Assembly: GCF_006345805.1 (NCBI RefSeq)
Contig: NC_043003.1
Location: forward strand, 31,000,001-31,064,000
Reading direction: 5' to 3'
DNA: 64,000 nt
From: Octopus sinensis
Lineage: Eukaryota
Numbering within the stretch: the stretch's first letter is position 1; every line of letters starts with the position of its first letter. Positions 1 through 57,030 of this stretch are shown here, piece after piece. The notes beneath the pieces are model-generated. The model saw only the letters and a program-made list of their open reading frames with translations. It made no database searches and was not told the origin of the DNA. The position numbers and the translations under genes were made by a program.

Positions 1-886
1 AAAAAAATTTATCTTACTATATTTTTTATTCGTTGTTAATACGTTTATTCATACACTGTTACGAAAATTTAACCTTTTTTAGGATACTTTCAAGCCTTCG
101 CCATAACTTGATTTATCTTCTATCTCTCTCTCTACAATATTTAACCGCAGCTGCCTCAAGCGGAATCCCATCTTTTCCCATCTTTCAGTCATTGCGGTCT
201 TCTTTTTCCTCCTCTTCTTCTCATATGCTAAAACTTGAAAACGCCATTACTATTACTATTACGATTCTGCAATTTAAATTCCCAGTTCAACTACTTTCTT
301 CTTCAATTTCAACTCCCGCTCGATGACCGCAGCAAGTTTTAAAAAAAATTTATCTTACTATATTTTTTATTCGTTGTTAATACGTTTATTCATACATGTT
401 ACGAAAATTTAACCTTTTTTAGGATACTTTCAAGCCTTCGCCATAACTTGATTTATCTTCCTATCTCTCTCTCTACAATATTTAACCGCAGGCTGCCTCA
501 AGCCGTAATCCCATCTTTTTCCCATCTTTCAGTCATTGGCGGTCTTCTTTTTCCTCTCTTCTTCTTCATATGCTAAAACTTGAAAACCGCCATTACTATT
601 ACTATTACGATTCTGCAATTTAAATTCCCAGTTCAACTACTTTCTTCTTCAATTTCAACTCCCGTCGATGACCGCAGCAAGTTCTTAAAAAAATTATCTT
701 ACTATATTTTTTATTCGTTGTTAATACGTTTATTCATACACTGTTACGAAAATTTAACCTTTTTTAGGATACTTTCAAGCCTTCGCCATAACTTGATTTA
801 TCTTCCTATCCTCTCTCTACAATATTTAACCGCAGGCTGCCTCAAGCCGTATAATCATCTTTTCCCATCTTTCAGTCATTGGCGGT
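1..886. repeat. ~345-bp tandem satellite, ~2.5 copies visible (runs off the window start)
   Basis: Unit 'aaaaaaatttatcttactatattttttattcgttg...gatgaccgcagcaag' restarts at ~1, ~341 and ~690; the third copy stops at 'ggcggt' (886) where RTE-associated sequence begins. Confidence 0.85.
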
Positions 887-1424: not shown

Positions 1425-4400
1425 ATGTCCACTGCTAACACCAGCTCCTGCCCACGGCGTGGTCAGGTTGGAAGAGAGATCAAAAGAAAAATACCACGAA
1501 AACTAGCCACCACCACTACAACCCTCCTCTTCTCAGGCGCCGAATCCCCCCTGTCCCCCCCACATCTCCTTCCCAGTTTTCAGAGTTGGCACTATCAATG
1601 TTGGTACATTGACAGGCAAGTCTAGTGAGATTGTAGAGATGCTAGAGAGAAGACAGGTTGATGTAGCTGATACAAGAGGTAAGATGGAGAGATGCTTCGG
1701 CTAGGGTCCTCACGGGCAAGGCACTTAGATACAAACTCTACTGGCAAATGGTAACGCGGAAGGTGTAGGGGGGTTGTAGGCATTCTCCTTGCGGAGGAAT
1801 GGGTGGATAAGGTATAGAGGTTGTCAGGGTTTGTGATAGAGTGCTTAAGCTCAGGTTGGTCCTACAGAGTGGCACAGCTATGATTATCTCAGCCTATGCC
1901 CCACAAGGGGACTACCAAATGATCAGAAGGACAACTTTTATGATACCCTTCTGCAGGCTACTTCAAAGACAGTAACAAGGACCTCATCTTTGTAGGTGGA
2001 GATTTTTTAACGGGCATGTTGGGGGGAATCGGGTATCTTCACTGGGGTACATGGTGGATATGGTATTGGCACCAGAAACGATGAGGGAACTAGACTACTG
2101 GAATTCTGTGATGCATGTAACCTTTCAATCTGCAACACTAACTTCAAGAAGCCAGTCTGCCACCTTATAACTTATCAGTCAGGAGACTCCGCTAGCCAAA
2201 TAGACTTCATCCTCACCAGACAACGGGATGCGGGGTGCTCTTGAATAAAAAGTCCCTCCCGGGTGAAGAATGTATCCCTCAGCATAGACTAATCATCAGT
2301 GACTTTAAGCTTGAGGCCAGAAGGACTCCAGAAACAAACCAATCCAGAAAAGAAGGATTTGGAGGTAAAGAACCCTTCGCCATGTCAGAAATTTAGGGAC
2401 ATACTCATCAAGAAATTTGATGAGAGGGAAGAGGAGCTTCAGATGTCAGACATAGAAGGTAGCTGGGAATTCCTACGGGACAGCTTGTTGAGTGCCACAG
2501 ACAAGTTTGTGGATGGTGCAAAGTCCCTTCCAGACCTAGAATTACGTGGTGGTGAATAGTGCAGTAGATAAAGCCATCTGTGAAAAGAGACGAGCCTGGA
2601 AAGCCTGGAGGAGGGGGGCAGCAGGGAACTGTACCAGATAGCCAAAAGGGAGGCTGGGCGGCAGGTATACATTGCCAAAGATGTAGCAGAAAAAGAAGAA
2701 GTTTGCCAATGTCCAGCGTCGCGAGGATCAAAGAGCTGAAGTATTTCGGATTGCCAGACAGTGTGTCAGAGAAAATAGCGATGTTATAGGAGAGAAATGT
2801 GTCCGCATGGATGATGGGGCACTTGCTTTTTACTAGTGAAAAGAAAGAGGCTTGGAGAAGCCATTATGAAAGACTGCTAAATGAGGAGAATGAATGGGAG
2901 GAGGAGAGCCTGCCAAATGTTGACCCAGTAGAGGGACCAGCTACCCGAATAGACAGCTCCCGTGTAGATAAGGCAATTAAGGATATGAAACCAGGCAAAG
3001 CCCCTGGCCTATCAGGAATCACTGCTGAGATGCTTAAAACAGCTGGCTATGTGGGCCATGCCATAGTCACCCGCATTGTAAACCAGGTAGTTCACAATGG
3101 AGCCATACCCAATGACTGGTGCAGCAGTACCATAGTCAACTGCTACAAGGGTAAGGGTGATGCTTAGATAGAAATAACTACAGAGGTATCAAAATGTTGG
3201 ACCAGGTGATGAAGGTCTCAGAGAAGGTCATAACCAATCTCATTAGGGAGAGAATTTGTTAGATGAAATGCAGTTCGGTTTTGTACCAGGTAGAAGCACC
3301 ACTGATGCTATATTCCTGGTCCGACAACTGCAGGAGAAGTACCTAGCTAAAGATAAACCCCTCTACATAGCTTTTGTAGACTTGGAGAAAGCCTTTGACA
3401 GGGTTCCCCGTTCCCTTATCTGGTGGTCGATGCGGAAACTGGAGATTGAAGAATGGCTAATAAGGGCTGTACAGGCTCTATACAGAGAGGCTGTTAGCAA
3501 GGTTAGGATTGGCAACGAATATAGTGAAGAATTCCGAGTAGAAGTAGGTGTGCACCAGGGCTCAGCCCTCAGTCCCCTTTTGTTCATCATAGTACTTCAA
3601 GCAATAACAGAGGAATTCAAAACGGGATGCCCCTGGGAGCTCCTCTATGCCGATGACCTAGCTCTCATAGCAGAATCACTACCGGAACTAGAAGAGAAAT
3701 TTCGGGTATGGAAGCAAGGGTTGGAATCAAAGGGCCTTAGAATAAATGTAGCAAAGACCAAAGTATTAGTAAGCAGCAAGAGGTACTCAACACACATCCC
3801 TCGGGTAGGTGGCCCTGCTCAACCTGTAGGAAAGGTACAGGTAGAAACTCCATAAGATGCACCCAATGTAAGTTATGGACATAAGAGGTGCAGCAACATT
3901 AAAGGGAAATTAACAGATAAGATAGCTTTCATGTGCGGCAGATGCACAGGGACAATAGACACAACAGACACTCAGAAAACAGATTCCATCACACTCCAGG
4001 GAGAGAAACTAGAAGTAGTTGATAGTTTCCGCTACCTGGGAGACCAAGTTAGTAGCGAGGTGGATGCACAGAGAGTATCACCACTAGAATACGAATAGCC
4101 TGGGCAAAGTTCAGAAAGCTCCTACCCCTACTGGCAACAAAAGGCCTCTCCCTCAGAGCAAAAGGTAGATTATATGATGCATGTGTGCGAACTGCCATGC
4201 TTCACGGTAATGAAACATGGGCTGTGACTGCAGAAGACATGCGTTAGACTTGAAAGAAATGAAGCTAGCATGATCCGTGGTGGTAGTGTCAGTGTGCACG
4301 CAAAACAGAGTGTAAGTATCCTGAGAGAAATGCTGGATATAAGAAGCATCAGATGTGGTGTGCAAGAGCGACGCTTGCGATGGTATGGTCATGTGCTGCG

Positions 4401-7399: not shown

Positions 7400-7631
7400 A
7401 CATACATCCCCGCAGCACAAGTATGTAGATATACATATGTATGTATATAAACATATATGTATGGATAAACATGTGTGTATATAAGCACACACACACATAC
7501 ACAAGCATATATACATATATATACATTTGTATTTTTATATTTGTGTGTGTGTCTACATATATATTTATGTATATATGTAATATATATATGTGTATATATG
7601 TATGTGTATATATATATATTATATATATATG

Positions 7632-7682
<51 letters not shown>

Positions 7683-8310
7683 GGTATATATATATATATG
7701 TATATATATATATGTATATATATATATGTAATATATATTGTATATATATATATGTATATATATATATGTATATATATATATGTATAGATATATTGTATAT
7801 ATATATATGTATATATATATTGTATATATATATATGTATATATATATATGTATATATATATATGTATATATATATATGTATATATATATATGTATATATA
7901 TAATGTATATATATATATGTATATATATATATGTATATATATATATGTATTATTTATATATGTATATATATATATGTATATATATATATGTATATATATA
8001 TGTATAAATGTATATATGTATATATATATGTATATATGTGTATATGTATATGTGTATATGTATATATATATATGTATATATATATATGTATATATATATA
8101 TGTATATGTATATATGTATATGTATATATGTATATATTAGTGTATATTATATGTATATGTATATATTATATGTATATATATGTATATGTATATATATGTA
8201 TATGTATATATATATGAATATATGTATGTATATGTATATATATGTATGTATATATATATGTATATGTATATGTATAATATATGAATATATGTATAATATG
8301 TATATATATG

Positions 8311-8399
<89 letters not shown>

Positions 8400-8415
8400 G
8401 TATATATAATATATG

Positions 8416-8446
<31 letters not shown>

Positions 8447-8461
8447 GTATATATATATATG

Positions 8462-8492
<31 letters not shown>

Positions 8493-8790
8493 GTATATAT
8501 ATCTTATATGTTATATATATATATGTATGTATATATATATATGTATTATATATATATATGTATATATATATATGTATATATATATATGTATATATATATA
8601 TGTAATATATATATGTATATATATATATGTATATATATATGTATATATTATATGTATATATATATATGTATATATATATATGTATATATATATATGTATA
8701 TATATATGTGTAATATATATATGTATATATATATGAATATATGTATATATATATGTATATATATATATATGTATATATATATGATATATG

Positions 8791-8821
<31 letters not shown>

Positions 8822-9981
8822 GAATAATGTATATATATATATAATTATGTATATATATATGAATATATGTATATATATATGAATATATGTATGAATATAT
8901 GTTGTATATATATATATATATATATGAATATGAATATATGTATATGTATATATATATATATATGAATATATGAATATATGTATGTATATATATATATATA
9001 TATGAATATATGAATATATGAAATATGTATGTATATATATATATATATATGAATATATGTATGTGTATGTATATATATAGTATGAATATATGTATGTATA
9101 TATATATATATATATATGAATATGTATGTAATATATATATATATATATGAATATATGTATGTATTATATATATATGAATATATGAATATATGTATGTATG
9201 TATTATATAATATATATATATATGAATATATGTATGTATGTATATATATATATATATGAATATATGAATATATGTATGTATATATATATATATATATATG
9301 AATATATGAATATATGTATGTATATATATATATATATATATATATTATATGAATATATGTATGTATATATATATATATATAATGAATATATGAATATATG
9401 TATGTATAGATATATATATATATATATATATGAATATATGTTATGTATATATATATATATATATATATGAATATATGAATATATGTATGTATATATATAT
9501 ATATATATGAATATATGAATATATGTTATGTATATATATATATATATATATGAATATATGAATATATGTATGTATATATATATATATATATGAATATATG
9601 TATTATATATATATATATATATGAATATATGAATATATTTATGTATATATATATATATATAATGAATATATGAATATATGTATGTATATATATAGGATAT
9701 ATTATGTATATATATATATATATGAATATATGTATGTATATATATATATATATTTATATATAATGATATGTATTATATATATATATATATATATGAATAT
9801 ATGTATGTATATATATATATATATATATATATAATATGAATATATGTAGTATATATATATATATATATAATGAATATATGTATGTATATATATATATATG
9901 AATTATGTATGTATATATATAATATATATATATATATGAATATATGTATGTATATATATTATATATATATATGAATATATG

Positions 9982-10017
<36 letters not shown>

Positions 10018-10031
10018 TATATGTATGTATG

Positions 10032-10065
<34 letters not shown>

Positions 10066-10135
10066 GAATATATGTATGTATATATATGTATGTTATATAT
10101 ATGTGCGTGTGTGTGTGTGTGTTTATATATATACA
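7400..10135. repeat. ~2.7-kb compound microsatellite (TA)n / (TATATG)n / (TATGAA)n
   Basis: Direct reading; source of the YI/MY/CI pseudo-ORFs. Confidence 0.97.
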
Positions 10136-10734: not shown

Positions 10735-11290
<556 letters not shown>

Positions 11291-12623: not shown

Positions 12624-12838
12624 TAAGGCATCAATCTAGCAGAATTGTGAGCACACCAGGCAAAATGCTTAGTGGCATTTTGTGTGTCTGCATGACCAGA
12701 GTTCAAATTCTGCTGAGGTTGACTTTGCCTTTCATCCTTTTGGGGTTGATAAATTAAGTACCAGTGAAACACTGGGTTGATGTAATCGACTAGTCCCCTC
12801 TCCACAAATTTCAGGCCTTGTGCCTTTAGTAGAAACAA
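12624..12838 (+). mobile_element. tRNA-derived SINE, family A (core 'gtcgactttgcctttcatcctttcggggtcgataaa'), CpG-decayed copy
   Basis: A-box-like 'ctagcagaattgtgagc', B-box 'gagttcaaattc', core matches the copies at 24931, 51353 and 56136. Confidence 0.85.
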
Positions 12839-13606
12839 TTATTATTCTATGTTTGACTTTTGCTTTATGTCTGTGCAAGTTGGCTCCAAGTCTCACCCAG
12901 AGACCTCAAGAGACAATAAGTTGGAAGTTCACGTTGTTGTTATGCCTAGTGTGCCATATATTTGTTTTTTTTTTTTTTTTGTGTTGTACTAGTGAATGTC
13001 TAATACATAAAAAAAAAAAAAAAAGGTTGTTTTAAACCTTGAGATTACATAGAGAGTATTTTGCGTAGGATATGAGCAGTTCCCATGAGCACTATCTTTT
13101 GAATTTCTGCCATTTTGGGGTTTCCTGGTATCTGAGTTAGCTAGCAATCAGCCTCTTTCGCTATCATTCCCAGGGCATCTATGACAACAGGTATTGTTTT
13201 AGTTTTCAGCTTCCACATTTTTCTGATTTCTATTTCAAGATCTTTATATTTGCTCAGTTTTTGGTAGGTCTTGACAGATATGTAGGTCTTGACAGTCATA
13301 TCAATGAGGAGGCATGTTCTTTGTCTGAAGTATTTCAATATGATGTCTGGCCTATTTGCATTTATCTTTCTGTCAGTTTGAATGGTGAAGTTCCAGAAGA
13401 GTGAGATGTGGTCATTTTCAAGCACTGGAGGTGGATTGTGTTGCCACCAGTTTTTTTCATAGGGCAAATCCAGGTTTTTGCAAATTACTCAGTGAATATA
13501 TTGTGCAGCTGTATCATGCCTGTTGAGATACTCTGTAGGCGCTAGAAGGCTGCACTTGGCGACAACATGATCAATGGTTTCATTTTGCTGTTGACATAAA
13601 ATTCAC
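12839..13606 (-). mobile_element. 3' end of an R4/Dong-type (restriction-like endonuclease) non-LTR retrotransposon
   Basis: Minus strand CQQQNETIDHVVAKC (CCHC knuckle), EYLNRHD, WNFTIQTDRKINANRPDII...LIDM...QKLSKYKDLEIEIRKMW...TIPVVIDALG (PD-(D/E)xK RLE), then 3' UTR and short (AAT) tail at ~12840. Confidence 0.88.
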
Positions 13607-16600
13607 CTCTTTAAAATATTTGTAGGAAATAACTTTTTTAACGTTATTCATATTGATGACGCCTGGGAACAATTTGTCCATTCCAATACAGTTATGTAAC
13701 CTCGTTGAAAGCTCTGTGACGTCGGTCATGTTCGGTTTAAGATGTTCTCTATACCATGTTATCAATTGCTGGCAACTCATATCTTTTACTTTGAACTGTG
13801 TCAGTACCATCACGGAAATTGTTGTAGGATTAACTACGTCAATAAGGAGCGAAGAGAGATTTGAATAATTGAACAGAAAAAACAGATTGGAAGTTCTTGT
13901 TGGTGTTATGCCTAGTGTGCCATATGTTTGGTTTTGTACTTAGTGTTGTACTAGTGAATGTTCCCACCAGTTTTTTTCATAGGGCAAATCCAGGTTTTTG
14001 CAAATTACCCAGTGAATATATTGTGCAGCTGTATCATGCCTGTTGAGATACTCTGTAGGCGCTAGGTGCTGCACTTGGCGACAACATGATCAATGGTTTC
14101 ATTTTGCTGTTGACATAAAATTCACCTCTTCAAAATATTTGTAGGAAATAACTTTTTTAACGTTATTCATATTGATGACGCCTGGGACAATTTGTCCATT
14201 CCAACACAGTTATGTAACCCCGTTGAAAGCTCTGTGACGTCGGTCATGTCCGGTTTAAGATGTTCTCTATACCATGTTATCAATTGCTGGCAACTCATAT
14301 CTTTTACTTTGAACTGTGTCAGTACCATCACGGAAATTGTTGTAGGATTAACTACGTCAATAAGGAGCAAGAGAGATTTGAATAATGAACAGAAAAAAAC
14401 AGAGATGGAAGTTCTTGTTGGTGTTATGCCTAGTGTGCCATATGTTTGGTTTTGTACTTAGTGTTGTACTAGTGAATGTTCCCACCAGTTTTTTTCATAG
14501 GGCAAATCCAGGTTTTTGCAAGTTACCCAGTGAATATATTGTGCAGCTCTATCATGCCTGTTGAGATACTCTGTAGGCCTAGGAGGCTGCACTTGGCGAC
14601 AACAGATCAATGGTTTCATTTTGCTGTTGACATAAATCACCTCTTAAACTATTTTAAATTGTAGGAAATAACTTTTTTAACGTTATTCATATTGATGACG
14701 CCTGGGAACAATTTGTCCATTCCAACCAGTTATGTAACCCCGTTGAAAGCTCTGTGATGTCGGTTCATGTCCGGTTTAAGATGTTCTCTATACCATGTTA
14801 TCAATTGCTGGCAACTCATATCTTTTACTTTGAACTGTGTCAGTACCATCACGGAAATTGTTGTAGGATTAACTACGTCAATAAGGAGTGAAGAGAGATT
14901 TGAATGATTGAACAGAAAAAACAGATTGGAAGTTTGTTTGTGGTTTATGCCTAGTGTGCCATATGTTTGGTTTTGTACTTAGTGTTGTACTAGTGAATGT
15001 TCCCACCAGTTTTTTTCATAGGGCAAATCCAGGTTTTTGAAAATTACCCAGTGAATATATTGTGCAGCTCTATCATGCTGTTGAGGTACTCTATAGGCGC
15101 TAGGTGACTGCACTCTGAGACAACATGATCAATGGTTTCATTTTGCTGTTGACATAAAATTCACCTCTTCAAAATATTTGTAGGAAATAACTTTTTTAAC
15201 GTTATTCATATTGATGATGCCTGGGAACAATTTGTCCATTCCAGTACAGTTATGTAACCCCGTTGAAAGCTCTGACGTCGGTCATGTCCGGTTTAAGATG
15301 TTCTCTATACCATGTTATCAATTGCTGGCAACTCATATCTTTTACTTTGAACTGTGTCAGTACCATCACGGAAATTGTTGTAGGATTAACTACGTCAATA
15401 AGGAGCGAAGAGAGATTTGAATAATAGAACAGAAAAAACAGATTGGAAGTTCTTGTTGGTGTTATGCCTAGTGTGCCATATGTTTGGTTTTGTACTTAGT
15501 GTTGTACTAGTGAATGTTCCCACCAGTTTTTTTCATAGGGCAAATCCAGGTTTTTGCAAGTTACCCAGTGAATATATTGTGCAGCTCTATCATGCCTGTT
15601 GAGATACTCTGTAGGCGCTAGGAGGCTGCACTTGGCGACAACATGATCAATGGTTTCATTTTGCTGTTGACATAAAATTCACCTCTTCAAAATATTTGTA
15701 GGAAATAACTTTTTTAACGTTATTCATATTGATGACGCCTGGGACCAATTTGTCCATTCCAACACAGTTATGTAACCCCGTTGAAAGCTCTGTGATGTCG
15801 GTTATGTCCGGTTTAAGATGTTCTCTATACCATGTTATCAATTGCTGGCAACTCATATCTTTTACTTTGAACTGTGTCAGTACCATCACGGAAATTGTTG
15901 TAGGATTAACTACGTCAATAAGGAGTGAAGAGAGATTTGAATGATTGAACAGAAAAAACAGATTGGAAGTTCTTGTTGGTGTTATGCCTAGTGTGCCATA
16001 TGTTTGGTTTTGTACTTAGTGTTGTACTAGTGAATGTTCCCACCAGTTTTTTTCATAGGGCAAATCCAGGTTTTTGAAAATTACCCAGTGAATATATTGT
16101 GCAGCTCTATCATGCCTGTTGAGGTACTCTATAGGCGCTAGGTGACTGCACTCTGAGACAACATGATCAATGGTTTCATTTTGCTGTTGACATAAAATTC
16201 ACCTCTTCAAAATATTTGTAGGAAATAACTTTTTTAACGTTATTCATATTGATGACGCCTGGGAACAATTTGTCCATTCCAACACAGTTATGTAACCCCG
16301 TTGAAAGCTCTGTGATGTCGGTCATGTCCGGTTTAAGATGTTCTCTATACAATGTTATCAATTGCTGGCAACTCATATCTTTTCTTTGAACTGTGTCGGT
16401 ACCATCATGGAAATTGTTGTAGGATTAACTACGTCAATAAGGAGTGAAGAGAGATTTGAATGATTGAACAGAAAAAACAGATTGGAAGTTCTTGTTGGTG
16501 TTATGCCTAGTGTGCCATATGTTTGGTTTTGTACTTAGTGTTGTACTAGTGAATGTTCCCACCAGTTTTTTTCATAGGGCAAATCCAGGTTTTTGCAAGT

Positions 16601-19600
16601 TACCCAGTGAATATATTGTGCAGCTCTATCATGCCTGTTGAGATACTCTGTAGGTGCTAGGAGGCTGCACTTGGCGACAACATGATCAATGGTTTCATTT
16701 TGCTGTTGACAGAAAATTCGCCTTCGTTATCTCTTTAATAATTTTGTAGGAAATAATTTTTTAACTGTTATTTACATTATTGTTGACGCCTGGAATTTGT
16801 CCATTCAACACAGTTATGTAACCCGTTAGAAAGCTCTGTGACGTCGGTCATGTCCGGTTTAAGATGTCCTATACATGTTATCAATTGCTGGCAACTCATA
16901 TCTTTTACTTTGAACTGTGTCAGTACCATCACGGAAATTGTTGTAGGATTAACTACGTCAATAAGGAGCGAAGAGAGATTTGAATAATAGAACAGAAAAA
17001 ACAGATTGGAAGTTCTTGTTGGTGTTATGCCTAGTGTGCCATATGTTTGGTTTTGTACTTAGTGTTGTACTAGTGAATGTTCCCACCAGTTTTTTTCATA
17101 GGGCAAATCCAGGTTTTTGAAAATTACCCAGTGAATATATTGTGCAGCTCTATCATGCCTGTTGAGGTACTCTATAGGCGCTAGGTGACTGCACTCTGAG
17201 ACAACATGATCAATGGTTTCATTTTGCTGTTGACATAAAATTCACCTCTTTAAAATATTTGTAGGAAATAACTTTTTTAACGTTATTCATATTGATGACG
17301 CCTGGGAACAATTTGTCCATTCCAATACAGTTATGTAACCCCGTTGAAAGCTCTGTGATGTCGGTCATGTCCGGTTTAAGATGTTCTCTATACCATGTTA
17401 TCAATTGCTGGCAACTCATATCTTTTACTTTGAACTGTGTCAGTACCATCACAGAAATTGTTGTAGGATTAACTACGTCAATAAGGAGCGAAGAGAGATT
17501 TGAATAATAGAACAGAAAAAACAGATTGGAAGTTCTTGTTGGTGTTATGCCTAGTGTGCCATATGTTTGGTTTTGTACTTAGTGTTGTACTAGTGAATGT
17601 TCCCACCAGTTTTTTTCATAGGGCAAATCCAGGTTTTTGAAAATTACCCAGTGAATATATTGTGCAGCTCTATCATGCCTGTTGAGGTACTCTATAGGCG
17701 CTAGGTGACTGCACTCTGAGACAAATGATCAATGGTTTCATTTTGCTGTTGACATAAAATTCACCTCTTTAAAATATTTGTAGGAAATAACTTTTTTAAC
17801 GTTATTCATATTGATGACGCCTGGGAACAATTTGTCCATTCCAATACAGTTATGTACCCCGTTGAAAGCTCTGTGACGTCGGTCATGTCCGGTTTAAGAT
17901 GTCTCTATACCATGTTATCAATTGCTGGCAACTCATATCTTTTACTTTGAACTGTGTCAGTACCATCACGGAAATTGTTGTAGGATTAACTACGTCAATA
18001 AGGAGCGAAGAGAGATTTGAATAATAGAACAGAAAAAACAGATTGGAAGTTCTTGTTGGTGTTATGCCTAGTGTGCCATATGTTTGGTTTTGTACTTAGT
18101 GTTGTACTAGTGAATGTTCCCACCAGTTTTTTTCATAGGGCAAATCCAGGTTTTTGCAAGTTACCCAGTGAATATATTGTGCAGCTCTATCATGCCTGTT
18201 GAGATACTCTGTAGGCGCTAGGAGGCTGCACTTGGCGACAACATGATCAATGGTTTCATTTTGCTGTTGACAGAAAATTCGCCTCTTTATAATATTTGTA
18301 GGAAATAACTTTTTTAACGTTATTCATATTGATGACGCCTGGGAACAATTTGTCCATTCCAACACAGTTATGTAACCCTGTTGAAAGCTCTGTGACGTCG
18401 GTCATGTCCGGTTTAAGATGTTCTCTATACCATGTTATCAATTGCTGGCAACTCATATCTTTTACTTTGAACTGTGTCAGTACCATCACGGAAATTGTTG
18501 TAGGATTAACTACGTCAATAAGGAGCGAAGAGAGATTTGAATAATAGAACAGAAAAAACAGATTGGAAGTTCTTGTTGGTGTTATGCCTAGTGTGCCATA
18601 TGTTTGGTTTTGTACTTAGTGTTGTACTAGTGAATGTTTCACCAGTTTTTTCATAGGGCAAATCCAGGTTTTTGAAAATTACCCAGTGAATATATTGTGC
18701 AGCTCTATCATGCCTGTTGAGGTACTCTATAGGCGCTAGGTGACTGCACTCTGAGACAACATGATCAATGGTTTCATTTTGCTGTTGACATAAAATTCAC
18801 CTCTTTAAAATATGTAGGAAATAACTTTTTTAACGTTATTCATATTGATGACGCCTGGGAACAATTTGTCCATTCCAATACAGTTATGTAACCCCGTGAA
18901 AGCTCTGTGATGTCGGTCATGTCCGGTTTAAGATGTTCTCTATACCATGTTATCAATTGCTGGCAACTCATATCTTTTACTTTGAACTGTGTCAGTACCA
19001 TCACGGAAAAGTGTGTAGGATTAACTACGTCAATAAGGAGCGAAGAGAGATTTGAATAATAGAACAGAAAAAACAGATTGGAAGTTCTTGTTGGTGTTAT
19101 GCCTAGTGTGCCATATGTTTGGTTTTGTACTTAGTGTTGTACTAGTGAATGTTCCCACCAGTTTTTTCATAGGGCAAATCCAGGTTTTTGAAAATTACCC
19201 AGTAATATATTGTGCAGCTCTATCATGCCTGTTGAGGTACTCTATAGGCGCTAGGTGACTGCACTCTGAGACAACATGATCAATGGTTTCATTTTGCTGT
19301 TGACATAAAATTCACCTCTTTAAAATATTTGTAGGAAATAACTTTTTTAACGTTATTCATATTGATGACGCCTGGGAACAATTTGTCCATTCCAATACAG
19401 TTATGTAACCCCGTTGAAAGCTCTGTGACGTCGGTCATGTCCGGTTTAAGATGTTCTCTATACCATGTTATCAATTGCTGGCAACTCATATCTTTTACTT
19501 TGAACTGTGTCAGTACCATCACGGAAATTGTTGTAGGATTAACTACGTCAATAAGGAGCGAAGAGAGATTTGAATAATAGAACAGAAAAAAGATTGGAAG

Positions 19601-20718
19601 TTCTTTTGGTGTTATGCCTAGTGTGCATATGTTGGTTTTGTACTTAGTGTTGTACTAGTGAATGTTCCCACCAGTTTTTTCATAGGGCAAATCCAGGTTT
19701 TTGCAAGTTACCCAGTGCAGCTCTATCATGCTGTTGAGATACTCTGTAGGCGCTAGGAGGCTGCACTTGGCGACAACATGATCAATGGTTTCATTTTGCT
19801 GTTGACATAAAATTCACCTCTTATAATATTCGTAGGAAATAACTTTTTTAACGTTATTCATATGATGACGCCTGGGAACAATTTGTCCATTCCAACACAG
19901 TTATGTGTAACCCCGTTGAAAGCTCTGTGATGTCGGTCATGTCCGGTTTAAGATGTTCTCTATACAATGTTATCAATTGCTGGCAACTCATATCTTTTCT
20001 TTGAACTGTGTCAGTACCATCATGGAAATTGTTGTAGGATTAACTACGTCAATAAGGAGTGAAGAGAGATTTGATGATTGAACAGAAAAAACAGATTGGA
20101 ATTCTTGTTGGTGTATGCCTAGTGTGCCATATGTTGGTTTTGTACTTAGTGTTGTACTAGTGAATTTCCCACCAGTTTTTTTCATAGGGCAAATCCAGGT
20201 TTTTGCAAGTTACCCAGTGAATATATTGTGCAGCTCTATCATGCCTGTTGAGATACTCTGTAGGCGCTAGAAGGCTGCACTTGGCGACAACATGATCAAT
20301 GGTTTCATTTTGCTGTTGACATAAAATTCACCTCTTTAAAATATTTGTAGGAAATAACTTTTTTAACGTTATTCATATTGATGACGCCTGGGAACAATTT
20401 GTCCATTCCAATACAGTTATGTAACCCCGTTGAAAGCTCTGTGATGTCGGTCATGTCCGGTTTAAGATGTTCTCTATACCATGTTATCAATTGCTGGCAA
20501 CCCATATCTTTTACTTTGAACTGTGTCAGTACCATCACGTAAATTGTTGTAGGATTAACTACGTCAATAAGGAGCGAAGAGAGATTTGAATGATTGAACA
20601 GAAAAAACAGATTGGAAGTTCTTGTTGGTGTTATGCCTAGTGTGCCATATGTTTGGTTTTGTATTTAGTGTTGTACTAGTGAATGTTCCCACCAGTTTTT
20701 TTTATAGGGCAAATCCAG
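13444..20718. repeat. Composite tandem array, 14 full units of ~518 bp plus a partial unit
   Basis: Marker 'ccaccagttttttt' at ~13444, 13964, 14482, 15003, 15520, 16040, 16559, 17083, 17603, 18120, 18640, 19155, 19668, 20169, 20689. Confidence 0.97.
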
Positions 20719-20877
20719 AGTTTGATTTTCCTTTTCATTTTTTTTTGTTTTGGTGGTGGGGAATGTAAAAAACATATTTGTCAAGTATTGGGGTCAGTGC
20801 ACTCAGCTAGTCCTCTCCCTATAACTTCAGTCCTTGTGCCTATAGTAGAAGGGATTATTATTATTATCATTATTATT

Positions 20878-21512
20878 AAGGTGGTGAGCTTGCAGACTTG
20901 TAAGCATGCCAAACAAAATGCTTAGCAGCATTTCATCGGTTCCTACATGCTGAGTTCAAATTGTGCCAAGATCAACTTTGCCTTTCATCCTTTCAGAGTT
21001 GATAAATCAAGTACTAGTGAAACAATGGGGTCAGTGTAATCGACTAGTCCCCTTCCTCAAACATTTCAGGTCTTGTGCTTTTAATAGAAAGTATTATTAT
21101 TCATTAGTGGTGGATGGAAAAATCAACAGGACTAAAATACTTTGTAGACTAAATTACTTTGTGGTGTTTAGTTTGATCTTTTTATATTTGAAGACCAAAT
21201 CCACCAGGTTATATTTTGCCCTTCATCTTTTGGGGGTCAATAAAATAATGTAGCACTCAAAGACCGGGATCAACATGATCAACTCCCACCAAATTTCTGG
21301 CCTTATGTATTTGTAATAATATTAATGATTTCAAATTTTGGCACAAAGCCAGCAGTTTTTGAGGGAAGGGGTAAGTCAATTTTATTGACCACAATAGGAT
21401 AGACGGCAAAGTCAACCTCACCAGAATTTGAACTCAGAACATAAAGATGGGTGAAATACCACTAAGCATTTTGTCCATCATGCTAACAATTCAGCCAGCT
21501 CACTACCTTAAT
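20878..21512. mobile_element. Cluster of decayed family-A SINEs (+ at ~20878-21090 and ~21180-21320; - at ~21330-21512)
   Basis: 'gagttcaaatt...actttgcctttcatccttt' on +; 'ggcaaagtcaacctcaccagaatttgaactc' as the reverse complement. Confidence 0.75.
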
Positions 21513-25163: not shown

Positions 25164-26460
25164 ACATGAGAGAGAGAGAAAAGAGGATAGTGAAATTGTG
25201 ACACAAATTATATATATATATACACACACAGATACAAGAGAGAAAAAGAGGATGATAATGAAATTGACATCCAAACATTTCTTAATGGAATTAGCACCAC
25301 AGACTAGAAAATGGATTTTGGCTACTATTTCCTGTTCTTTGAAAGTTTATCTCCTCTACTTGGTTTACCATGTCTTGTGACAAATATTACCTTGCTTGGA
25401 AATGGGTAAGGGTTGGTGTATCTGGCCATTGAAGATCTGCCTGAATGAACTTTGTCTGACCCATGCAAGCGTCAAAAGTGGCGATAATGATGCTGGATGA
25501 AATGTCTGCAACTATACTGGTTTTAAGGCCTTGATAGCTAAGTATAGTTTGGATGTAGTGGTCTCATAGTTTGATGACTAGCCCCAGCTGTTAGCACCTT
25601 GGTGGTATTTGAATTTGGAATACAAAGAACCAGAACAGATAATGCAAGACCTTTCATTTGATGCTCTCACAATTCCACTAATCTATTGCTCCGGATTACT
25701 ACTTTATTCATCAACCCCAAAAGGATGACAGGCCTTGGCAACATTTGAACTTTGATCACAGAAGGCCAGATTGACTTTTGCAATATATTCAGTCCCATGC
25801 TCTTACAACTCTGTTAGTTCATTGCCTGTTGTGTTGAATACATATTCCAGACCAAATGGAACACCCATCAATTACATTGTGTCTCCACCTACAGTAGTGA
25901 TTTCTACCTCTATACATTTACCTATTTTTACTTGGGAAGATAGATGGATCTAGTAATGGAAGTCTTTTCTTCTCATTGTATGATTCTTGTATCATCATAA
26001 CAGCAGGCACTTGAGAAGGCAAAAATCATATAGCCAGTCTGCTGTCATAGTGACAGTTAACTGGTTTGCTCATCGCTGGTCATTAAAATACTTCATCATG
26101 GGATGTTTCTTGTGAATTCAATGAAGACTGAGTGGCCAACTATGATTACAACTCTCTTTTGTTAACTACTTCATTTATAGTCAGAAAGATATCAGGACTG
26201 GATTATTGTCTTTGATTTTTTTCTTCTAATTTAATGGTTCTTAGAGATCTTATTCTCAAATAGGAAGTAAGCATATATATTGCCATCCTTTCTCTTCTCT
26301 TTATTCATGCATTTAATATACATATATATTATAATATTATATATATATATATATATATACCACACACACATGATATATATATATATACTATATATATATT
26401 ATATATATATATATATAACACACACACACACACTTATATATATATATATATATATTATAT

Positions 26461-26493
<33 letters not shown>

Positions 26494-26597
26494 CACACAC
26501 ATACATATATATATATATATACACAACACACATATATATATATATATATATATATTATAATATATATATATACAACCACACACACATATATATATAT

Positions 26598-26845
26598 CAT
26601 CATCGCATCATCATCATCATCGTTTTAACGTCCGTTTTCCCGCGCTAGCACGGGTTGGACGGTTTCGAACGGGGTCTGGATAGCTCGGGATGCCCCAGGT
26701 CCAGTCTAGTTCTGGCAGTGTTTCTACAGCTGGATGCCCTTCCTACGCCAACCACTCCGCGAGTGTAGTGGGTGCTTTTTACGTGCCACCTGCACAGGTG
26801 CCAGAGGGTCGGCATCGGCCACGTTCGGATGGTGCTTTTTATGGG
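26598..26845 (-). mobile_element. RTE 3'-terminal fragment with (CAT)n tail
   Basis: Reverse complement of the 4830-5044 RTE 3' UTR. Confidence 0.85.
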
Positions 26846-26878
26846 GGATATATAATATATACACACCACACACAACAC

Positions 26879-26949
<71 letters not shown>

Positions 26950-27015
26950 ATACACACACACAACACACATCATATATATATATATAATATATATATATAT
27001 ACACCACAACACCAC

Positions 27016-27072
<57 letters not shown>

Positions 27073-27123
27073 CACCCACATACATATTTATATAATCTAT
27101 ATATATATATATATATATAATCA

Positions 27124-27172
<49 letters not shown>

Positions 27173-27202
27173 ACATATAATATATATATATATACACACA
27201 AC

Positions 27203-27249
<47 letters not shown>

Positions 27250-27378
27250 ATATATATATATATCATATATATATATATATATTATACCACACATACTATT
27301 ATATATATATATTATATATATATATATATTACACACCACACATACATATATATATATACACATACATATATAATATAC

Positions 27379-27411
<33 letters not shown>

Positions 27412-27457
27412 TATATATATATATTATATATTATATATATATACACACACACACACA

Positions 27458-28472: not shown

Positions 28473-28509
28473 CACATATATATATATATATTATAATATA
28501 TATATATAT

Positions 28510-28726
<217 letters not shown>

Positions 28727-30024
28727 ATACACACACACACATATATATATATATTATACACACCACATATACATATATATATATATACACACACACATAC
28801 ATATATATATATATATTATATATATAACACACATACATATATATATATATATATTATACACCACACATACATATATACATATATATATATATACACACAC
28901 ATATATATATACATATATATATATATACACACATACATATATATATATGAGCATTCTTGTGTGTGTATGTGCATATATTTTAAGTGTGTTTATGACTTGT
29001 GCACAAGTATATCTCATGTACATACACACAGACACACAAATATATAGTACTTTATGAGATGTTTCTTGTGAATTAAATGGAGATTGAGTTAACAGCTATG
29101 ATTACAGTTCTCTTTTGTTTCTATTCAAAAAAAGATATCAGGACCAGATTATCATCTTTGATCCTTTTCTAATTCAATGGTTCTTGGAGATTTTATCATT
29201 TCCACCTCCATTGCTTCTCCACAATACTGATGCATCAATTACTTTCCCCACTACAATAAACCTTTTTCATGCATCAAGGTGGCTCTCTTTCATCTTGCAA
29301 GCTGCAACGCAACCCCACTAATTTGATATCTGCCCTGCCCCTCCAATAGCACTTAAGAAGTTGGTAAATTGAATTGAGTATTAACAATGCATAACTTAAA
29401 GGGATTCTTTTGTCTTTCCAGTAGCAAGGCAAGGCAATCTCTCTAATAGTGAGGCCACAGGAAGAAAACAAAAGCACCCAGTAAACTCTATAAATCAGTT
29501 GGTGTTAAGAAGTGACCCCATGTGTAGAAACCATAAAAACTGTTGAAGAAAGATATAAATGGATGATAATATCAATAATAGGTATAGGCATATCCGTGTG
29601 GTTTAGAAATTTGCTTTGGAACAACTGTGGTTCAAGGTTCATTCCTACTATCAACTGCTGTCTTCTAGTTTAGCTGTGACTTGACCAGTGCCTTTTGGTT
29701 GAAATTTTGTAACAGAAACTGGAAGTTCGTGTGTGTGTGTGTGTGTGCATATGTGAGTGAGCATACTTCTTGTCTTGACATTATGCCTCTTTGCTTGGCA
29801 TATGCATGTCAATTATAAACAAAGCATCACTGTTCATACAAATGAGGTTATTTATTTACAATCCTCCATGAGAGCATGCCTGAGTTGTTCAATAGATGGG
29901 AAGAAATATTACTTTGCTTGGAAAAAACTTTGGATTGATGACAGGAAGAGCATCTGCTTGAACAAAGTTTTGTCTGCCTCATGTAAAGAGAAAAGAGGGG
30001 ATTAAAATGATAATGGTGATGATA

Positions 30025-56135: not shown

Positions 56136-57030
56136 AGATGTCGATTACATTGACACCAATGTTCAACTGGTGCTTATTTTATCGAACCCGAAAGAATGAA
56201 AAGCAAAGTCGACCTCGGCAGAATTTTAACTCACAACGTAGCTGCAGACGAAATACCTATTTCTTTACTACCCACAAGGGGCTAAACACAGAGGAGACAA
56301 TCAAGGACAGACAGACGGATTAAGTCGATTATATCGACCCCAGTGCGTAACTGGTACTTATTTAATCGACCTCGAAACGATGAAAGGCAAAGTGGACCTC
56401 GACGGAATTTGAATTCAGAACGTAGCGGCAGACGAAATACCTATTTCTTTACTACCCACAAGGGGCTAAACACAGAGGAGACAATCAAGGACAGACAGAC
56501 GGATTAAGTCGATTAAATCGACCCCAGTGCGTAACTGGTACTTATTTAATCGACCCCGAAAGGATGAAAGGCAAAGTGGACCTCGGCGGAATTTGAATTC
56601 AGAACGTAACGGCAGACGAAATACCAATTTCTTTACTACCCACCAGGGACTAAACACAGAGAGAGGACAAACAAGGACAGACAAAGGGACTAAGTCGATT
56701 ACATCGACCCCAGTGCGTAACTGGTACTTATTTAATCGACCCCGAAAGGATGAAAGCAAAGTCGACCTCGGCGGAATTTGCACTCAGAACGTAGCGGCTA
56801 CGAAATACCAATTTCTTTACTACCCACAAGGGGCTAAACACAGAGGCGACAAACGGATTAAGTCGATTACATCGACCCCAGTGCTTAACAGGTACTTAAT
56901 TCATCGACCCCGAAAGGATGAAAGCAAAATCGACCTCGGCAGAATTTGAACTCAGAGCGTAATGGCAGACGAAATACCGCTCAGCGTTTTTCCTGGTTTG
57001 ATAACGATCCTGCCAGTTTTCCGCCCTAAC
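56136..57030 (-). mobile_element. Head-to-tail concatemer of 5 family-A SINE units
   Basis: Junction 'gaaatacc|(t/a)atttctttactaccca' repeated at ~56258, 56440, 56625 and 56808; only the outermost unit has the A-box head. Confidence 0.9.

What the first reader, a model, noticed from the sequence alone, without database searches (positions are those of the whole stretch)
13444..20718. 14x composite satellite: R4 LINE zinc-knuckle piece + R4 3' UTR piece + unknown ~290-bp cassette
Seen (minus strand), each unit is: R4 CQQQNETIDHVV..C...EYLNRHD...PYEKNWW, fused directly to ~75 bp of the R4 3' UTR (the same sequence occurs at 12920-13000), then non-R4 sequence. Only the last unit continues into the full RLE domain and tail. 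Inference: an internally deleted R4 copy captured foreign sequence and was amplified in place, by unequal exchange, rolling circle or RT template jumping. It could be a source of antisense/piRNA against R4.
Basis: partly seen in the sequence, partly recalled or inferred. Interest (0 to 1): 0.7.

Follow-up and report, generated by a model that had tools for sequence, protein, structure and literature searches.

The report
Tandem array of LINE–EB1 gene chimera
In an octopus-type genome, a 520-bp unit made of two pieces of a Dong/R4 jumping gene plus the first 71 codons of a microtubule-protein (EB1-like) gene has been copied head-to-tail 14 times; it is a tidy example of how mobile elements capture host gene pieces and seed new repeat arrays, but both processes are already known.

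Summary
Window ~13439-20718 (minus-strand sense) holds 14 head-to-tail units of 502-524 bp. A short partial unit precedes them, and the last unit runs on into an undeleted LINE 3' half. Each unit has three parts. The first is 86 nt from inside the LINE 3' UTR. The second is a ~274-nt foreign cassette. The third is ~155 nt encoding the LINE zinc knuckle.

The cassette is not LINE sequence. An independent copy of the same LINE subfamily (L005, 85.5% identical) loses homology exactly at the cassette/zinc-knuckle junction and carries the normal ORF there. The cassette is the 5' end of a cephalopod EB1/MAPRE-like gene: a 61-nt leader plus codons 1-71 of the calponin-homology domain (E 4e-11 to a cephalopod-type paralogue, 4e-6 to human EB1 structures).

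The LINE is an R2-like zinc-knuckle plus restriction-like-endonuclease element with a (TAA)n tail, which fits Dong/R4.

Units differ by 3.4% on average. They form two haplotypes with mosaics and multi-unit block duplications, which indicates amplification by unequal exchange. The EB1 fragment shows no coding constraint.

The most likely history is a template-switch LINE/mRNA chimera, then an internal deletion and tandem duplication, then DNA-level amplification. This is a new member of known kinds and of moderate-to-low interest. A small-RNA role is untested.

The parts
20683..20718 (-). 5'-most partial unit: the last ~36 nt of the zinc-knuckle (ZK) piece (..CTGGATTTGCCCTATAAAAAAAACTGGTGGGAACAT). 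Degenerate similarity may extend to ~20724. This is the upstream edge of the array.
   Evidence: Sequence read compared with the unit consensus.
13958..20682 (-). Thirteen complete short units, U1-U13 (502-524 bp). Each is a U piece (86 nt of LINE 3' UTR), an EB1-like cassette (61-nt leader plus codons 1-71) and a ZK piece (~155 nt).
   Evidence: coordinates and alignment; divergence and haplotypes.
13439..13957 (-). Fourteenth unit, U14 (U + cassette + ZK). Its ZK is not followed by the deletion but continues into the RLE domain.
17511..17596 (-). Example unit U7: the U piece, an internal segment of the Dong/R4 3' UTR. It is homologous to window 12996-12908 and to L005:1415-1500.
17450..17510 (-). 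Example unit U7: 61-nt non-coding leader upstream of the EB1-like ATG. It is a putative 5' UTR of the donor gene and has no similarity to the LINE.
   Evidence: The 5' UTR reading is an inference.
17237..17449 (-). Example unit U7: codons 1-71 of an EB1/MAPRE-like calponin-homology domain (MVLTQFKVKDMSCQQLITWYREHLKPDMTDITELSTGLHNCIGMDKLFPGVINMNNVKKVISYKYFKEVNF).
   Evidence: Exhaustive phmmer; tblastn of P0124 residues 1-72, E ~1e-16 in every unit; alignment A2; PDB EB1 hit, E 4.4e-6; Pfam CH, weak.
17077..17236 (-). Example unit U7: ZK piece of the LINE ORF (LCQQQNETIDH...PYEKNWWEH). It is one base out of frame with the EB1-like ORF.
   Evidence: Family HMM positions 176-233, E 2.5e-27; 90.6% nt identity to L005:811-970.
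13045..13438 (-). Terminal copy only: RLE domain and C-terminus of the LINE ORF (NPPPVLENDH...RPDIILK...LLIDMTV...KYKDLEIEI...AHILRKILSM*). It is degenerate: a frameshift near 13143 and a small deletion in the PxD region.
   Evidence: Homology to L005. Fold of a relative matches the R2 RLE.
12847..13044 (-). Terminal copy: complete LINE 3' UTR. It contains the U segment at 12996-12908.
   Evidence: 85.5% identity to L005 through to the tail.
12838..12846 (-). (AAT)3 tail of the LINE. The same 9 bp is the (ATT)3 tail of an oppositely oriented SINE (12640-12837).
   Evidence: L005 and L001 end in (TAA)7 and (TAA)5.

Best explanation
The array is non-coding, neutrally decaying DNA. Its 520-bp monomer is a three-part chimera.

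Shown:
- Two parts come from one Dong/R4-type LINE, an R2-like element with a zinc knuckle, a restriction-like endonuclease and a (TAA)n tail. They are ~155 nt of ORF encoding the zinc knuckle and 86 nt from inside the 3' UTR.
- These two parts are joined by a ~440-nt deletion with 3-4 nt of microhomology (AACA).
- The third part is the first ~274 nt of an EB1/MAPRE-like gene: a 61-nt leader plus codons 1-71. It lies in the same orientation as the LINE ORF and is fused directly to the 5' side of the zinc-knuckle piece.

Inferred history:
(1) While copying LINE RNA at a (TAA)n target, here the tail of a SINE, the LINE reverse transcriptase switched template. It moved from the LINE RNA, at the start of the zinc-knuckle region, onto an EB1-like mRNA and ran to its 5' end. 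The product was a chimeric retrocopy: EB1 5' end + 5'-truncated LINE. The last unit plus the terminal copy still has exactly this structure.
(2) An illegitimate tandem duplication occurred, with breakpoints in the 3' UTR and at the start of the EB1 leader. A deletion also removed the RLE and proximal UTR. Together these produced the short monomer. Their order is unknown.
(3) Repeated unequal sister-chromatid or homologue exchange and gene conversion amplified and partly homogenised the monomer to 14 copies. The single-copy RLE/UTR end was left to diverge alone.

No function is required. Any small-RNA output is untested.
For: Array and unit anatomy.

LINE identity:
- The best protein hit is Octopus bimaculoides A0A0L8FXY1, 80% identical.
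- The family profile hits the ZK piece at E 2.5e-27.
- The AlphaFold model of the relative (pLDDT 85.7) matches the ZK+RLE module of R2 structures 9dou and 8gh6, E 1e-6 to 1e-5, TM 0.60-0.65.
- (TAA)n tails occur in L005 and L001, and AATAATAAT in the window.
- Dong belongs to the R4 lineage and sits in TAA repeats (PMC3774820). Dong-R4 LINEs are abundant and recently active in octopus (PMC13282606).

Cassette is foreign:
- L005 homology (85.5% over 767 nt) starts exactly at the cassette/ZK junction.
- L005 has the canonical ORF upstream, HMM E 1e-130.
- The family HMM does not see the cassette.
- The cassette has no nucleotide similarity to the rest of the LINE.

Cassette is the EB1-like 5' end:
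- Exhaustive phmmer gives E 4e-11 to P0124, with the match from Met1.
- P0124 matches the EB1 CH domain in the PDB at E 2.7e-25.
- The cassette ORF alone matches EB1 at E 4.4e-6.
- Relatives are named MAPRE1-like in Octopus vulgaris and Argonauta hians.
- tblastn hits every unit and nothing else in 64 kb.

Junctions and microhomology.

DNA-level amplification:
- Mean divergence is 3.4%.
- There are two linked haplotypes, A and B, in an irregular order.
- U9 is a mosaic unit.
- U3 and U6 are identical in substitutions although three units apart.
- Divergence is lowest at lag 3 (BBA|BBA, then BA|BA).

Neutral evolution: 3 synonymous against 31 non-synonymous variant events, 7 of 14 frames broken, and equal variant density in all parts.

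The array's U is about 9% diverged from the terminal U outside the A-run, against 1-2% within the array. This fits old founding events followed by later homogenisation.

Template-switch chimeras with this layout are documented for LINEs (PMC2104539).
Against: - The donor EB1-like gene was not found. The closest protein is only 44% identical, so the leader cannot be shown to be a 5' UTR.
- Capture from RNA cannot be proved over capture from DNA. The one octopus paralogue examined is intronless.
- No target-site duplication can be seen, because the 5' edge of the block is a truncated unit. This truncated first unit is not predicted by the simple history and needs a later deletion at the edge, or retrotransposition of a whole array transcript.
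- In classic template-switch chimeras the 5' part is a full-length RNA copy. Here only the 5' ~274 nt are present.
- Part of the single-base indels may be read errors.
- Read support for the array was not available.
Confidence: 0.7

Rival explanations
1. The LINE inserted into, or next to, a pre-existing EB1-like gene or retro-pseudogene. On this reading the cassette is ordinary flanking DNA of the insertion site, not part of a chimeric cDNA. Duplication and amplification followed as in the best explanation.
For: Cephalopod EB1-like paralogues can be intronless (P0129), so an intron-free cassette does not prove an RNA origin. The orientation and the direct junction fit an insertion equally well.
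Against: No trace of the rest of the CH domain, its more conserved half, exists anywhere in the 64-kb window. The LINE tail abuts the (ATT)n tail of a SINE, the expected Dong-type (TAA)n target, so the target was the SINE tail and not an EB1 coding region. Under this model the EB1 fragment would have had to end at codon 71 already, right at that SINE tail.
Confidence: 0.17
2. The whole array was made in one reverse-transcription event, either by serial template jumps of the LINE reverse transcriptase or by rolling-circle copying of a circular chimeric RNA. A variant is that the block is a 5'-truncated retrocopy of a transcript from an array located elsewhere.
For: The first unit is truncated inside the ZK piece, as in LINE 5' truncation. 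The block ends in a complete LINE 3' UTR and a (TAA)-type tail in a Dong-type target. The junctions show short microhomology. Double template switches by LINE RTs are documented (PMC2104539).
Against: One-step synthesis predicts initially identical units with only private mutations. Instead there are 24 parsimony-informative sites, two linked haplotypes differing at ten or more sites, mosaic units and multi-unit block duplications. Three identical jumps per unit, repeated 13 times, is unparsimonious. No target-site duplication is seen. The retrocopy variant is not excluded.
Confidence: 0.08
3. The array is a tail-to-internal LINE tandem formed by repeated insertion of 5'-truncated copies into the tail of the previous copy. 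This is the double-insertion model.
For: Dong/R4 elements target (TAA)n, which is also their own tail. Non-LTR elements commonly form tail-to-internal tandems (PMC5932611).
Against: Tested and not met. The inter-unit junction (U to cassette) lies about 80 nt upstream of the true LINE 3' end as defined by L005, and there is no (TAA)n at any inter-unit junction. Every unit also shares the same internal deletion and the same host-gene fragment.
Confidence: 0.02
4. The array is an assembly artefact, an over-expanded or mis-joined repeat.
For: Many single-base deletions between units suggest noisy long-read consensus. No reads were available.
Against: Units carry structured, shared variants including shared indels, which assemblers do not invent. 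The flanks and the terminal undeleted copy are coherent.
Confidence: 0.03

Closest known systems
LINE template-switch chimeric retrocopies (U6/L1 and mRNA/L1 in mammals; WEIRD/MGL in Magnaporthe; PMC2104539)
   Same: A copy of a cellular RNA is fused directly, in the same orientation, to the 5' side of a 5'-truncated LINE that keeps its own 3' UTR and tail. The last unit plus the terminal copy has exactly this layout.
   Different: The LINE here is an RLE-type Dong/R4 element, not an APE-type L1 or MGL. Only the 5' ~274 nt of the mRNA are present, not a full-length copy. Target-site duplications cannot be seen. The chimera was later turned into a tandem array.
Transposon-derived tandem arrays and satellites (R1, Bari1 and hobo arrays in Drosophila, PMC5932611; reviews PMC9659126, PMC12628747)
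   Same: A piece of a mobile element became the monomer of a head-to-tail array that grew and was partly homogenised by unequal exchange. The copy number (~14-16) is like the hobo expansion described there.
   Different: The founding junction is not tail-to-head or tail-to-internal from a double insertion. It is an internal-UTR-to-host-gene junction. The monomer contains a host gene fragment and an internal deletion. Only one 7.3-kb locus is known.
Short internally deleted derivatives of R2-group LINEs (SIDEs; from my own knowledge of Eickbush and Eickbush 2012, not checked here)
   Same: An R2-superfamily element has lost its internal coding region by deletion while keeping 3' UTR sequence.
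   Different: The units lack the true 3' end and the 5' end or ribozyme, so they should not be mobile. They carry host sequence and are tandem, not dispersed.
Stellate / Su(Ste) repeats of Drosophila melanogaster (from my own knowledge, not checked here)
   Same: They are tandem repeats that combine a host-gene-derived segment with transposon sequence.
   Different: Su(Ste) is known to produce piRNAs that silence its parent gene. No expression or small-RNA data exist for this array, and the host fragment here is only 71 codons.

Membership tests
Dong/R4 clade of non-LTR retrotransposons (the LINE-derived parts) | Cys/His zinc knuckle followed by a PD-(D/E)XK restriction-like endonuclease, C-terminal to the RT | tested here: met
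   The CxxC...H....C motif and RPD...D...K(Y)K motifs are present in the terminal copy and its relatives. The profile matches at E 2.5e-27 and E 1e-130 for L005. The model of P0001 superimposes on the R2 ZK+RLE, E 1e-6, TM 0.65. An RVT_1 domain lies upstream in relative L001.
Dong/R4 clade of non-LTR retrotransposons (the LINE-derived parts) | (TAA)n 3' tail and residence in TAA repeats, as for Dong | tested here: met
   L005 ends in (TAA)7 and L001 in (TAA)5. The window copy ends in AATAATAAT, shared with a SINE (ATT)n tail. The Dong/TAA link is from PMC3774820.
Dong/R4 clade of non-LTR retrotransposons (the LINE-derived parts) | No N-terminal AP endonuclease | tested here: inconclusive
   The ORF fragments upstream of the RT in L001 have no Pfam endonuclease hit. 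However, the copy is fragmented and its 5' end is not defined.
Dong/R4 clade of non-LTR retrotransposons (the LINE-derived parts) | RT-domain phylogeny groups it with R4, Dong and Rex6, not with R2, Hero, NeSL or CRE | not tested
   No reference RT set was available. The window has no RT of this element. Published repeat annotation reports Dong-R4 as abundant in octopus (PMC13282606, PMC8967140), but this subfamily was not matched to those libraries.
EB1/MAPRE (RP/EB) family (the cassette) | N-terminal calponin-homology domain of EB type | tested here: met
   The cassette ORF matches cephalopod EB1-like proteins at E 4e-11 and EB1/EB3 structures at E 4.4e-6. The Pfam CH hit is weak, E 0.004. 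The alignment runs from Met1 to the conserved NF.
EB1/MAPRE (RP/EB) family (the cassette) | Complete CH domain plus a C-terminal EB-homology coiled-coil domain, that is, a functional gene | tested here: not met
   Only residues 1-71 are present. Nothing in the window matches residue 73 onward. There is no coding constraint and 7 of 14 frames are broken. It is a gene fragment, not a family member.
Template-switch chimeric retrocopy | Cellular RNA copy fused directly, in the same orientation, to a 5'-truncated LINE that keeps its tail | tested here: met
Template-switch chimeric retrocopy | 5' part is a full-length RNA copy, and the chimera is flanked by target-site duplications | tested here: inconclusive
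   Only the 5' ~274 nt of the mRNA are present. Whether the cassette starts at the transcription start is unknown. The 5' flank is overwritten by the array and no duplication is seen.
Tail-to-internal LINE tandem (double insertion) | Inter-unit junction joins the element's 3' terminus or tail to an internal position | tested here: not met
   The junction lies ~80 nt before the 3' end and has no (TAA)n.
Satellite DNA in the strict sense | Long arrays, high genomic copy number, often at several loci | not testable with these tools
   Only 14 units (7.3 kb) are seen, with no other copy in the window. No eukaryotic genome-wide DNA search was available. The exact cassette ORF is absent from the protein collections.

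The most novel reading that the evidence does not exclude
The array could be a small-RNA (piRNA-type) source. Because each unit joins Dong/R4 sequence to the 5' end of an EB1-like gene, its transcripts could silence both an active LINE family and members of the cephalopod-specific EB1-like gene family. That would be an octopus analogue of Su(Ste)/Stellate. Separately, the monomer could have been multiplied by the LINE reverse transcriptase itself, through serial jumps or copying of a circular RNA. That would be a new RT-driven route to satellites.
Probability: 0.07. Interest if true: 0.7.

Novelty: new member of a known kind. Interest (0 to 1): 0.33.

Why it matters
This locus preserves in one place three steps that are usually seen separately. 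They are capture of a host gene's 5' end by an RLE-type LINE, internal deletion of the chimera, and conversion of the product into a tandem array by unequal exchange. The undeleted founder-type copy still sits at the end of the array.

LINE/mRNA chimeras are documented mainly for APE-type LINEs, so an example from a Dong/R4 element in a mollusc extends the range of elements involved. Octopus genomes have abundant, recently active Dong-R4 families (PMC13282606). Octopods also carry a divergent EB1-like gene family, of which the one locus examined is intronless. Together these hint that retroposition has shaped that family.

If the array proved to be transcribed into small RNAs it would become more interesting. 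As it stands it is a well-resolved but unsurprising piece of repeat evolution.

Tried and rejected
- TRF did not report the array because its period limit is 500. The repeat finder and an anchor search were used instead.
- I first suspected the cassette was the diverged LINE ORF just upstream of the zinc knuckle. MAFFT and BLASTP gave a collinear but weak match, LST...G...G.I..NN.KKVIS, E 0.14. I also saw a resemblance of its 5' half to the RLE core, LLID..KYKD..W, E 0.83. Both were rejected. The family HMM scores the cassette at -2 bits. There is no nucleotide similarity to the terminal copy. L005 shows the real upstream ORF.
- The word-indexed protein search with the cassette ORF found nothing. 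The same search with an EB1-like alignment also found nothing, so the parent gene was not identified.
- An exact look-up of P0001 and of the 77-aa cassette ORF found no contigs.
- A sequence search of the RLE region against the PDB found nothing. A fold search was needed.
- Rfam and tRNA scans of 12-22 kb gave only sub-threshold microsatellite-type miRNA hits and no tRNA.
- A literature search for the two SRA run numbers found nothing, so the species of L004 and L005 is unknown.
- P0121 and P0131 are repeat-peptide artefacts and were ignored.
- No target-site duplication was found at the block edges.


Full report
**1. Is the array there?**

Yes. TRF missed it because its longest period is 500. 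The repeat finder reports families of 11-14 copies at spacings of 502-524 bp between about 13.4 and 20.8 kb. A 15-nt anchor occurs 14 times in the array and once more at 12981 in the downstream UTR.

I cut the minus strand at the anchors and aligned the 14 units. Thirteen are complete short units, U1-U13, at window 20682-13958. The fourteenth, U14 (13957-13439), is identical in layout, but its last part runs on into ~600 nt that the others lack. Upstream of U1 there is a ~36-nt partial unit ending near 20718.

Nothing similar exists elsewhere in the 64-kb window. The window itself is AT-microsatellite-rich eukaryotic DNA full of SINEs and LINE fragments.

**2. The LINE-derived parts**

On the minus strand the terminal copy reads as follows:
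- a zinc knuckle, LCQQQNETIDHVVAKCS..APTEYLNRHD..AQYIHW..C;
- ...PYEKNWWQH;
- an RLE-type domain, NRPDIILK...CLLIDMTV...KLSKYKDLEIEI;
- a C-terminus, ...AHILRKILSM*, reached after one frameshift.

A search of 5.8 billion proteins gives 332 hits. The best is an Octopus bimaculoides protein, 80% identical. The rest come from cnidarians, echinoderms, tunicates, crustaceans and metagenome assemblies. Long relatives carry an RVT_1 domain upstream. A profile built from 40 long relatives hits the unit's zinc-knuckle piece at E 2.5e-27.

Sequence search of the PDB found nothing. An AlphaFold model of the octopus relative (pLDDT 85.7) superimposes on the zinc-knuckle plus RLE module of R2 cryo-EM structures (9dou, 9nl3, 8gh6; E 1e-6 to 1e-5, probability 1.00, TM 0.60-0.65). 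The next matches are generic PD-(D/E)XK nucleases.

An independent copy of the same subfamily is L005, a 1585-nt Logan contig. It is 85.5% identical over 767 nt to window 13598-12838 and ends in (TAA)7. A distant relative, L001, ends in (TAA)5. The window copy ends in AATAATAAT.

Dong, a member of the R4 lineage, resides in TAA repeats (PMC3774820). Dong-R4 LINEs are abundant and recently active in octopus (PMC13282606, PMC8967140). So the 'R4' label is reasonable in the sense of Dong/R4, but I did not test it by RT phylogeny.

**3. The three junctions**

*(a) ZK to U.* The units read CTGGTGGGAACA|TTCACTAG. The LINE ORF reads ...GGTGGGAACA|CAAACC, and the UTR reads ...TAAACA|TTCCC (L005) or AGACA|TTCAC (window). 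This is a ~440-nt deletion with 3-4 nt of microhomology.

*(b) U to cassette.* Homology to the UTR runs 86 nt and stops about 80 nt before the true LINE end. The U piece is therefore internal UTR, and no (TAA)n lies between units. This rules out a tandem made by repeated insertion into the previous tail (PMC5932611 model).

*(c) Cassette to ZK.* L005 homology begins within a few bases of ...AATTTT|ATGTCAACAG.

**4. What is the cassette?**

It is open in one frame for ~119 codons, one base out of frame with the zinc knuckle. My first idea was that it is the diverged LINE ORF just upstream of the knuckle. That rested on weak pairwise matches and failed for three reasons:
- The family profile does not detect it.
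- It has no nucleotide similarity to the LINE.
- L005 carries the true upstream ORF...ETEVFIIAAKDQCLPTRNYQANILKNNSSPTCHI|CQQQNETIDH, with profile E 1e-130.

An exhaustive HMMER scan of 1.84 billion representatives then found real relatives. These are P0124 (E 4e-11), P0122, P0123, P0126, P0127, P0128 and P0129. In five of the seven (P0124, P0126, P0127, P0128, P0129) the match lies at the N-terminus; in the two-CH-domain proteins P0122 and P0123 the best match is to the second CH domain.

They are RP/EB (EB1/MAPRE)-like proteins. Their sources name them so in Octopus vulgaris, Argonauta hians and Drosophila serrata. P0124 hits EB1 CH-domain structures at E 2.7e-25. The cassette ORF alone hits EB1/EB3 structures at E 4.4e-6, with all of the top ten being EB1 or EB3.

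tblastn of P0124 residues 1-72 hits every unit at E about 1e-16, and nothing in the window matches later residues. The alignment runs from the initiator Met to the conserved Asn-Phe.

The cassette is therefore a 61-nt leader plus codons 1-71 of an EB1-like gene, in the same orientation as the LINE ORF. The parent gene was not found: the best relative is 44% identical, and the indexed searches found nothing. The one octopus paralogue I could inspect is an intronless 1110-bp ORF, so the absence of introns in the cassette does not settle RNA against DNA capture.

**5. How did the array grow?**

Pairwise substitution divergence averages 3.4%, with a range of 0-6.7%. There are 24 parsimony-informative sites. 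They define two linked haplotypes:
- A: U1, U2, U5, U8, U10, U12.
- B: U3, U4, U6, U7, U9, U11.
- U13 and U14 are intermediate.

U9 is a mosaic, with an A-like 5' part and a B-like 3' part. U3 and U6 are identical in substitutions although three units apart. Divergence is lowest at lag 3, which fits a BBA|BBA block followed by BA|BA.

This is the signature of repeated unequal exchange and conversion. It is not the pattern expected from one burst of copying, which would leave only private mutations.

Variant density is the same in U, leader, EB1 codons and ZK, at 12-20 per 100 nt. In the EB1 codons, 3 of 34 variant events are synonymous, and seven of fourteen units have a broken frame. The sequence therefore evolves neutrally.

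One caveat applies. Of 43 indel events, 32 are single-base and most are deletions. Some are shared by related units and so are real. Others may be long-read errors.

**6. Most likely history**

The last unit plus the terminal copy has the layout EB1 5' end + 5'-truncated LINE + full UTR + tail. That is exactly the layout of LINE template-switch chimeras (PMC2104539). Its tail sits in the (ATT)n tail of an inverted SINE, which is a Dong-type target.

I therefore infer three steps:
- (i) A template switch from LINE RNA to an EB1-like mRNA occurred during target-primed reverse transcription.
- (ii) A tandem duplication with breakpoints in the UTR and at the leader, together with the RLE/UTR deletion, created the 520-bp monomer.
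- (iii) Unequal exchange amplified it.

Steps (i) and (ii) are inferred. Step (iii) is supported.

The truncated first unit is unexplained by this simple history. It needs an edge deletion, or the block may be a 5'-truncated retrocopy of an array transcript.

The rivals are scored in the report sections:
- insertion into an EB1-like gene;
- one-step RT-driven array formation;
- double insertion, which was tested and not met;
- an assembly artefact.

**7. Verdict**

TE-derived tandem arrays and LINE/mRNA chimeras are both known, and this locus combines them for a Dong/R4 element in an octopod. It is a new member of known kinds and of moderate-to-low interest. It would gain interest only if small-RNA or transcript data showed the array to be active.

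Noticed in passing
window 56140-56978: A 184-bp-period tandem of 4.6 copies (88% matches). Its unit looks like the same octopod SINE that flanks the array (GTCGATTACATCGACCCC...GAATTTGAACTCAGAACG). This is a second transposon-derived tandem repeat in the window.
   Followed up: no
window 12640-12846; also 20880-21100, 20785-20870, ~21380-21500: SINE copies of one family flank the block. The SINE at 12640-12837 is in plus sense, and its (ATT)3 tail is the same 9 bp as the LINE's (AAT)3 tail. The LINE therefore seems to have used the SINE tail as its TAA-repeat target.
   Followed up: partly
L003:10001-11110 (Octopus vulgaris OX597832.1); proteins P0122, P0123, P0127: Octopods carry a family of divergent EB1/MAPRE-like proteins. 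The O. vulgaris member is an intronless ORF with a TGACGTCA motif ~140 nt upstream. Two members (one from Argonauta hians, one of unknown source) have two CH domains in tandem. This could be a retroposed, lineage-specific gene family.
   Followed up: partly
L003, frame +1, residues 279-387 (about nt 840-1160): Another fragment of the same LINE family's zinc-knuckle region (profile E 2.6e-17) lies 9 kb upstream of the O. vulgaris EB1-like gene.
   Followed up: no
window 7507-10102: An impure (AT)n microsatellite of 2.6 kb with G+C of 9.5%. There are several further (AT)n tracts of 0.2-0.6 kb (10735-11281, 26316-27443, 28476-28948).
   Followed up: no
window 1-886: A 345-bp-period tandem of 2.6 copies (96% matches) lies at the edge of the window. 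It may continue beyond the edge.
   Followed up: no
window 45692-47377 (+) and 3256-3855 (+): ORFs of 561 aa and 199 aa look like endonuclease/RT parts of other, unrelated LINE families.
   Followed up: no
window 13020-13035 and 12965-12980 (minus strand): The terminal LINE 3' UTR contains a T16 run and an A16 run flanking 'ATGTATTAGACATTCACTAGTACAACAC'. The A16 run replaces the 'TAAGTACAAAACCAAA' of the array units, and L005 has neither run. The origin is unknown; it may be slippage or a small insertion.
   Followed up: no
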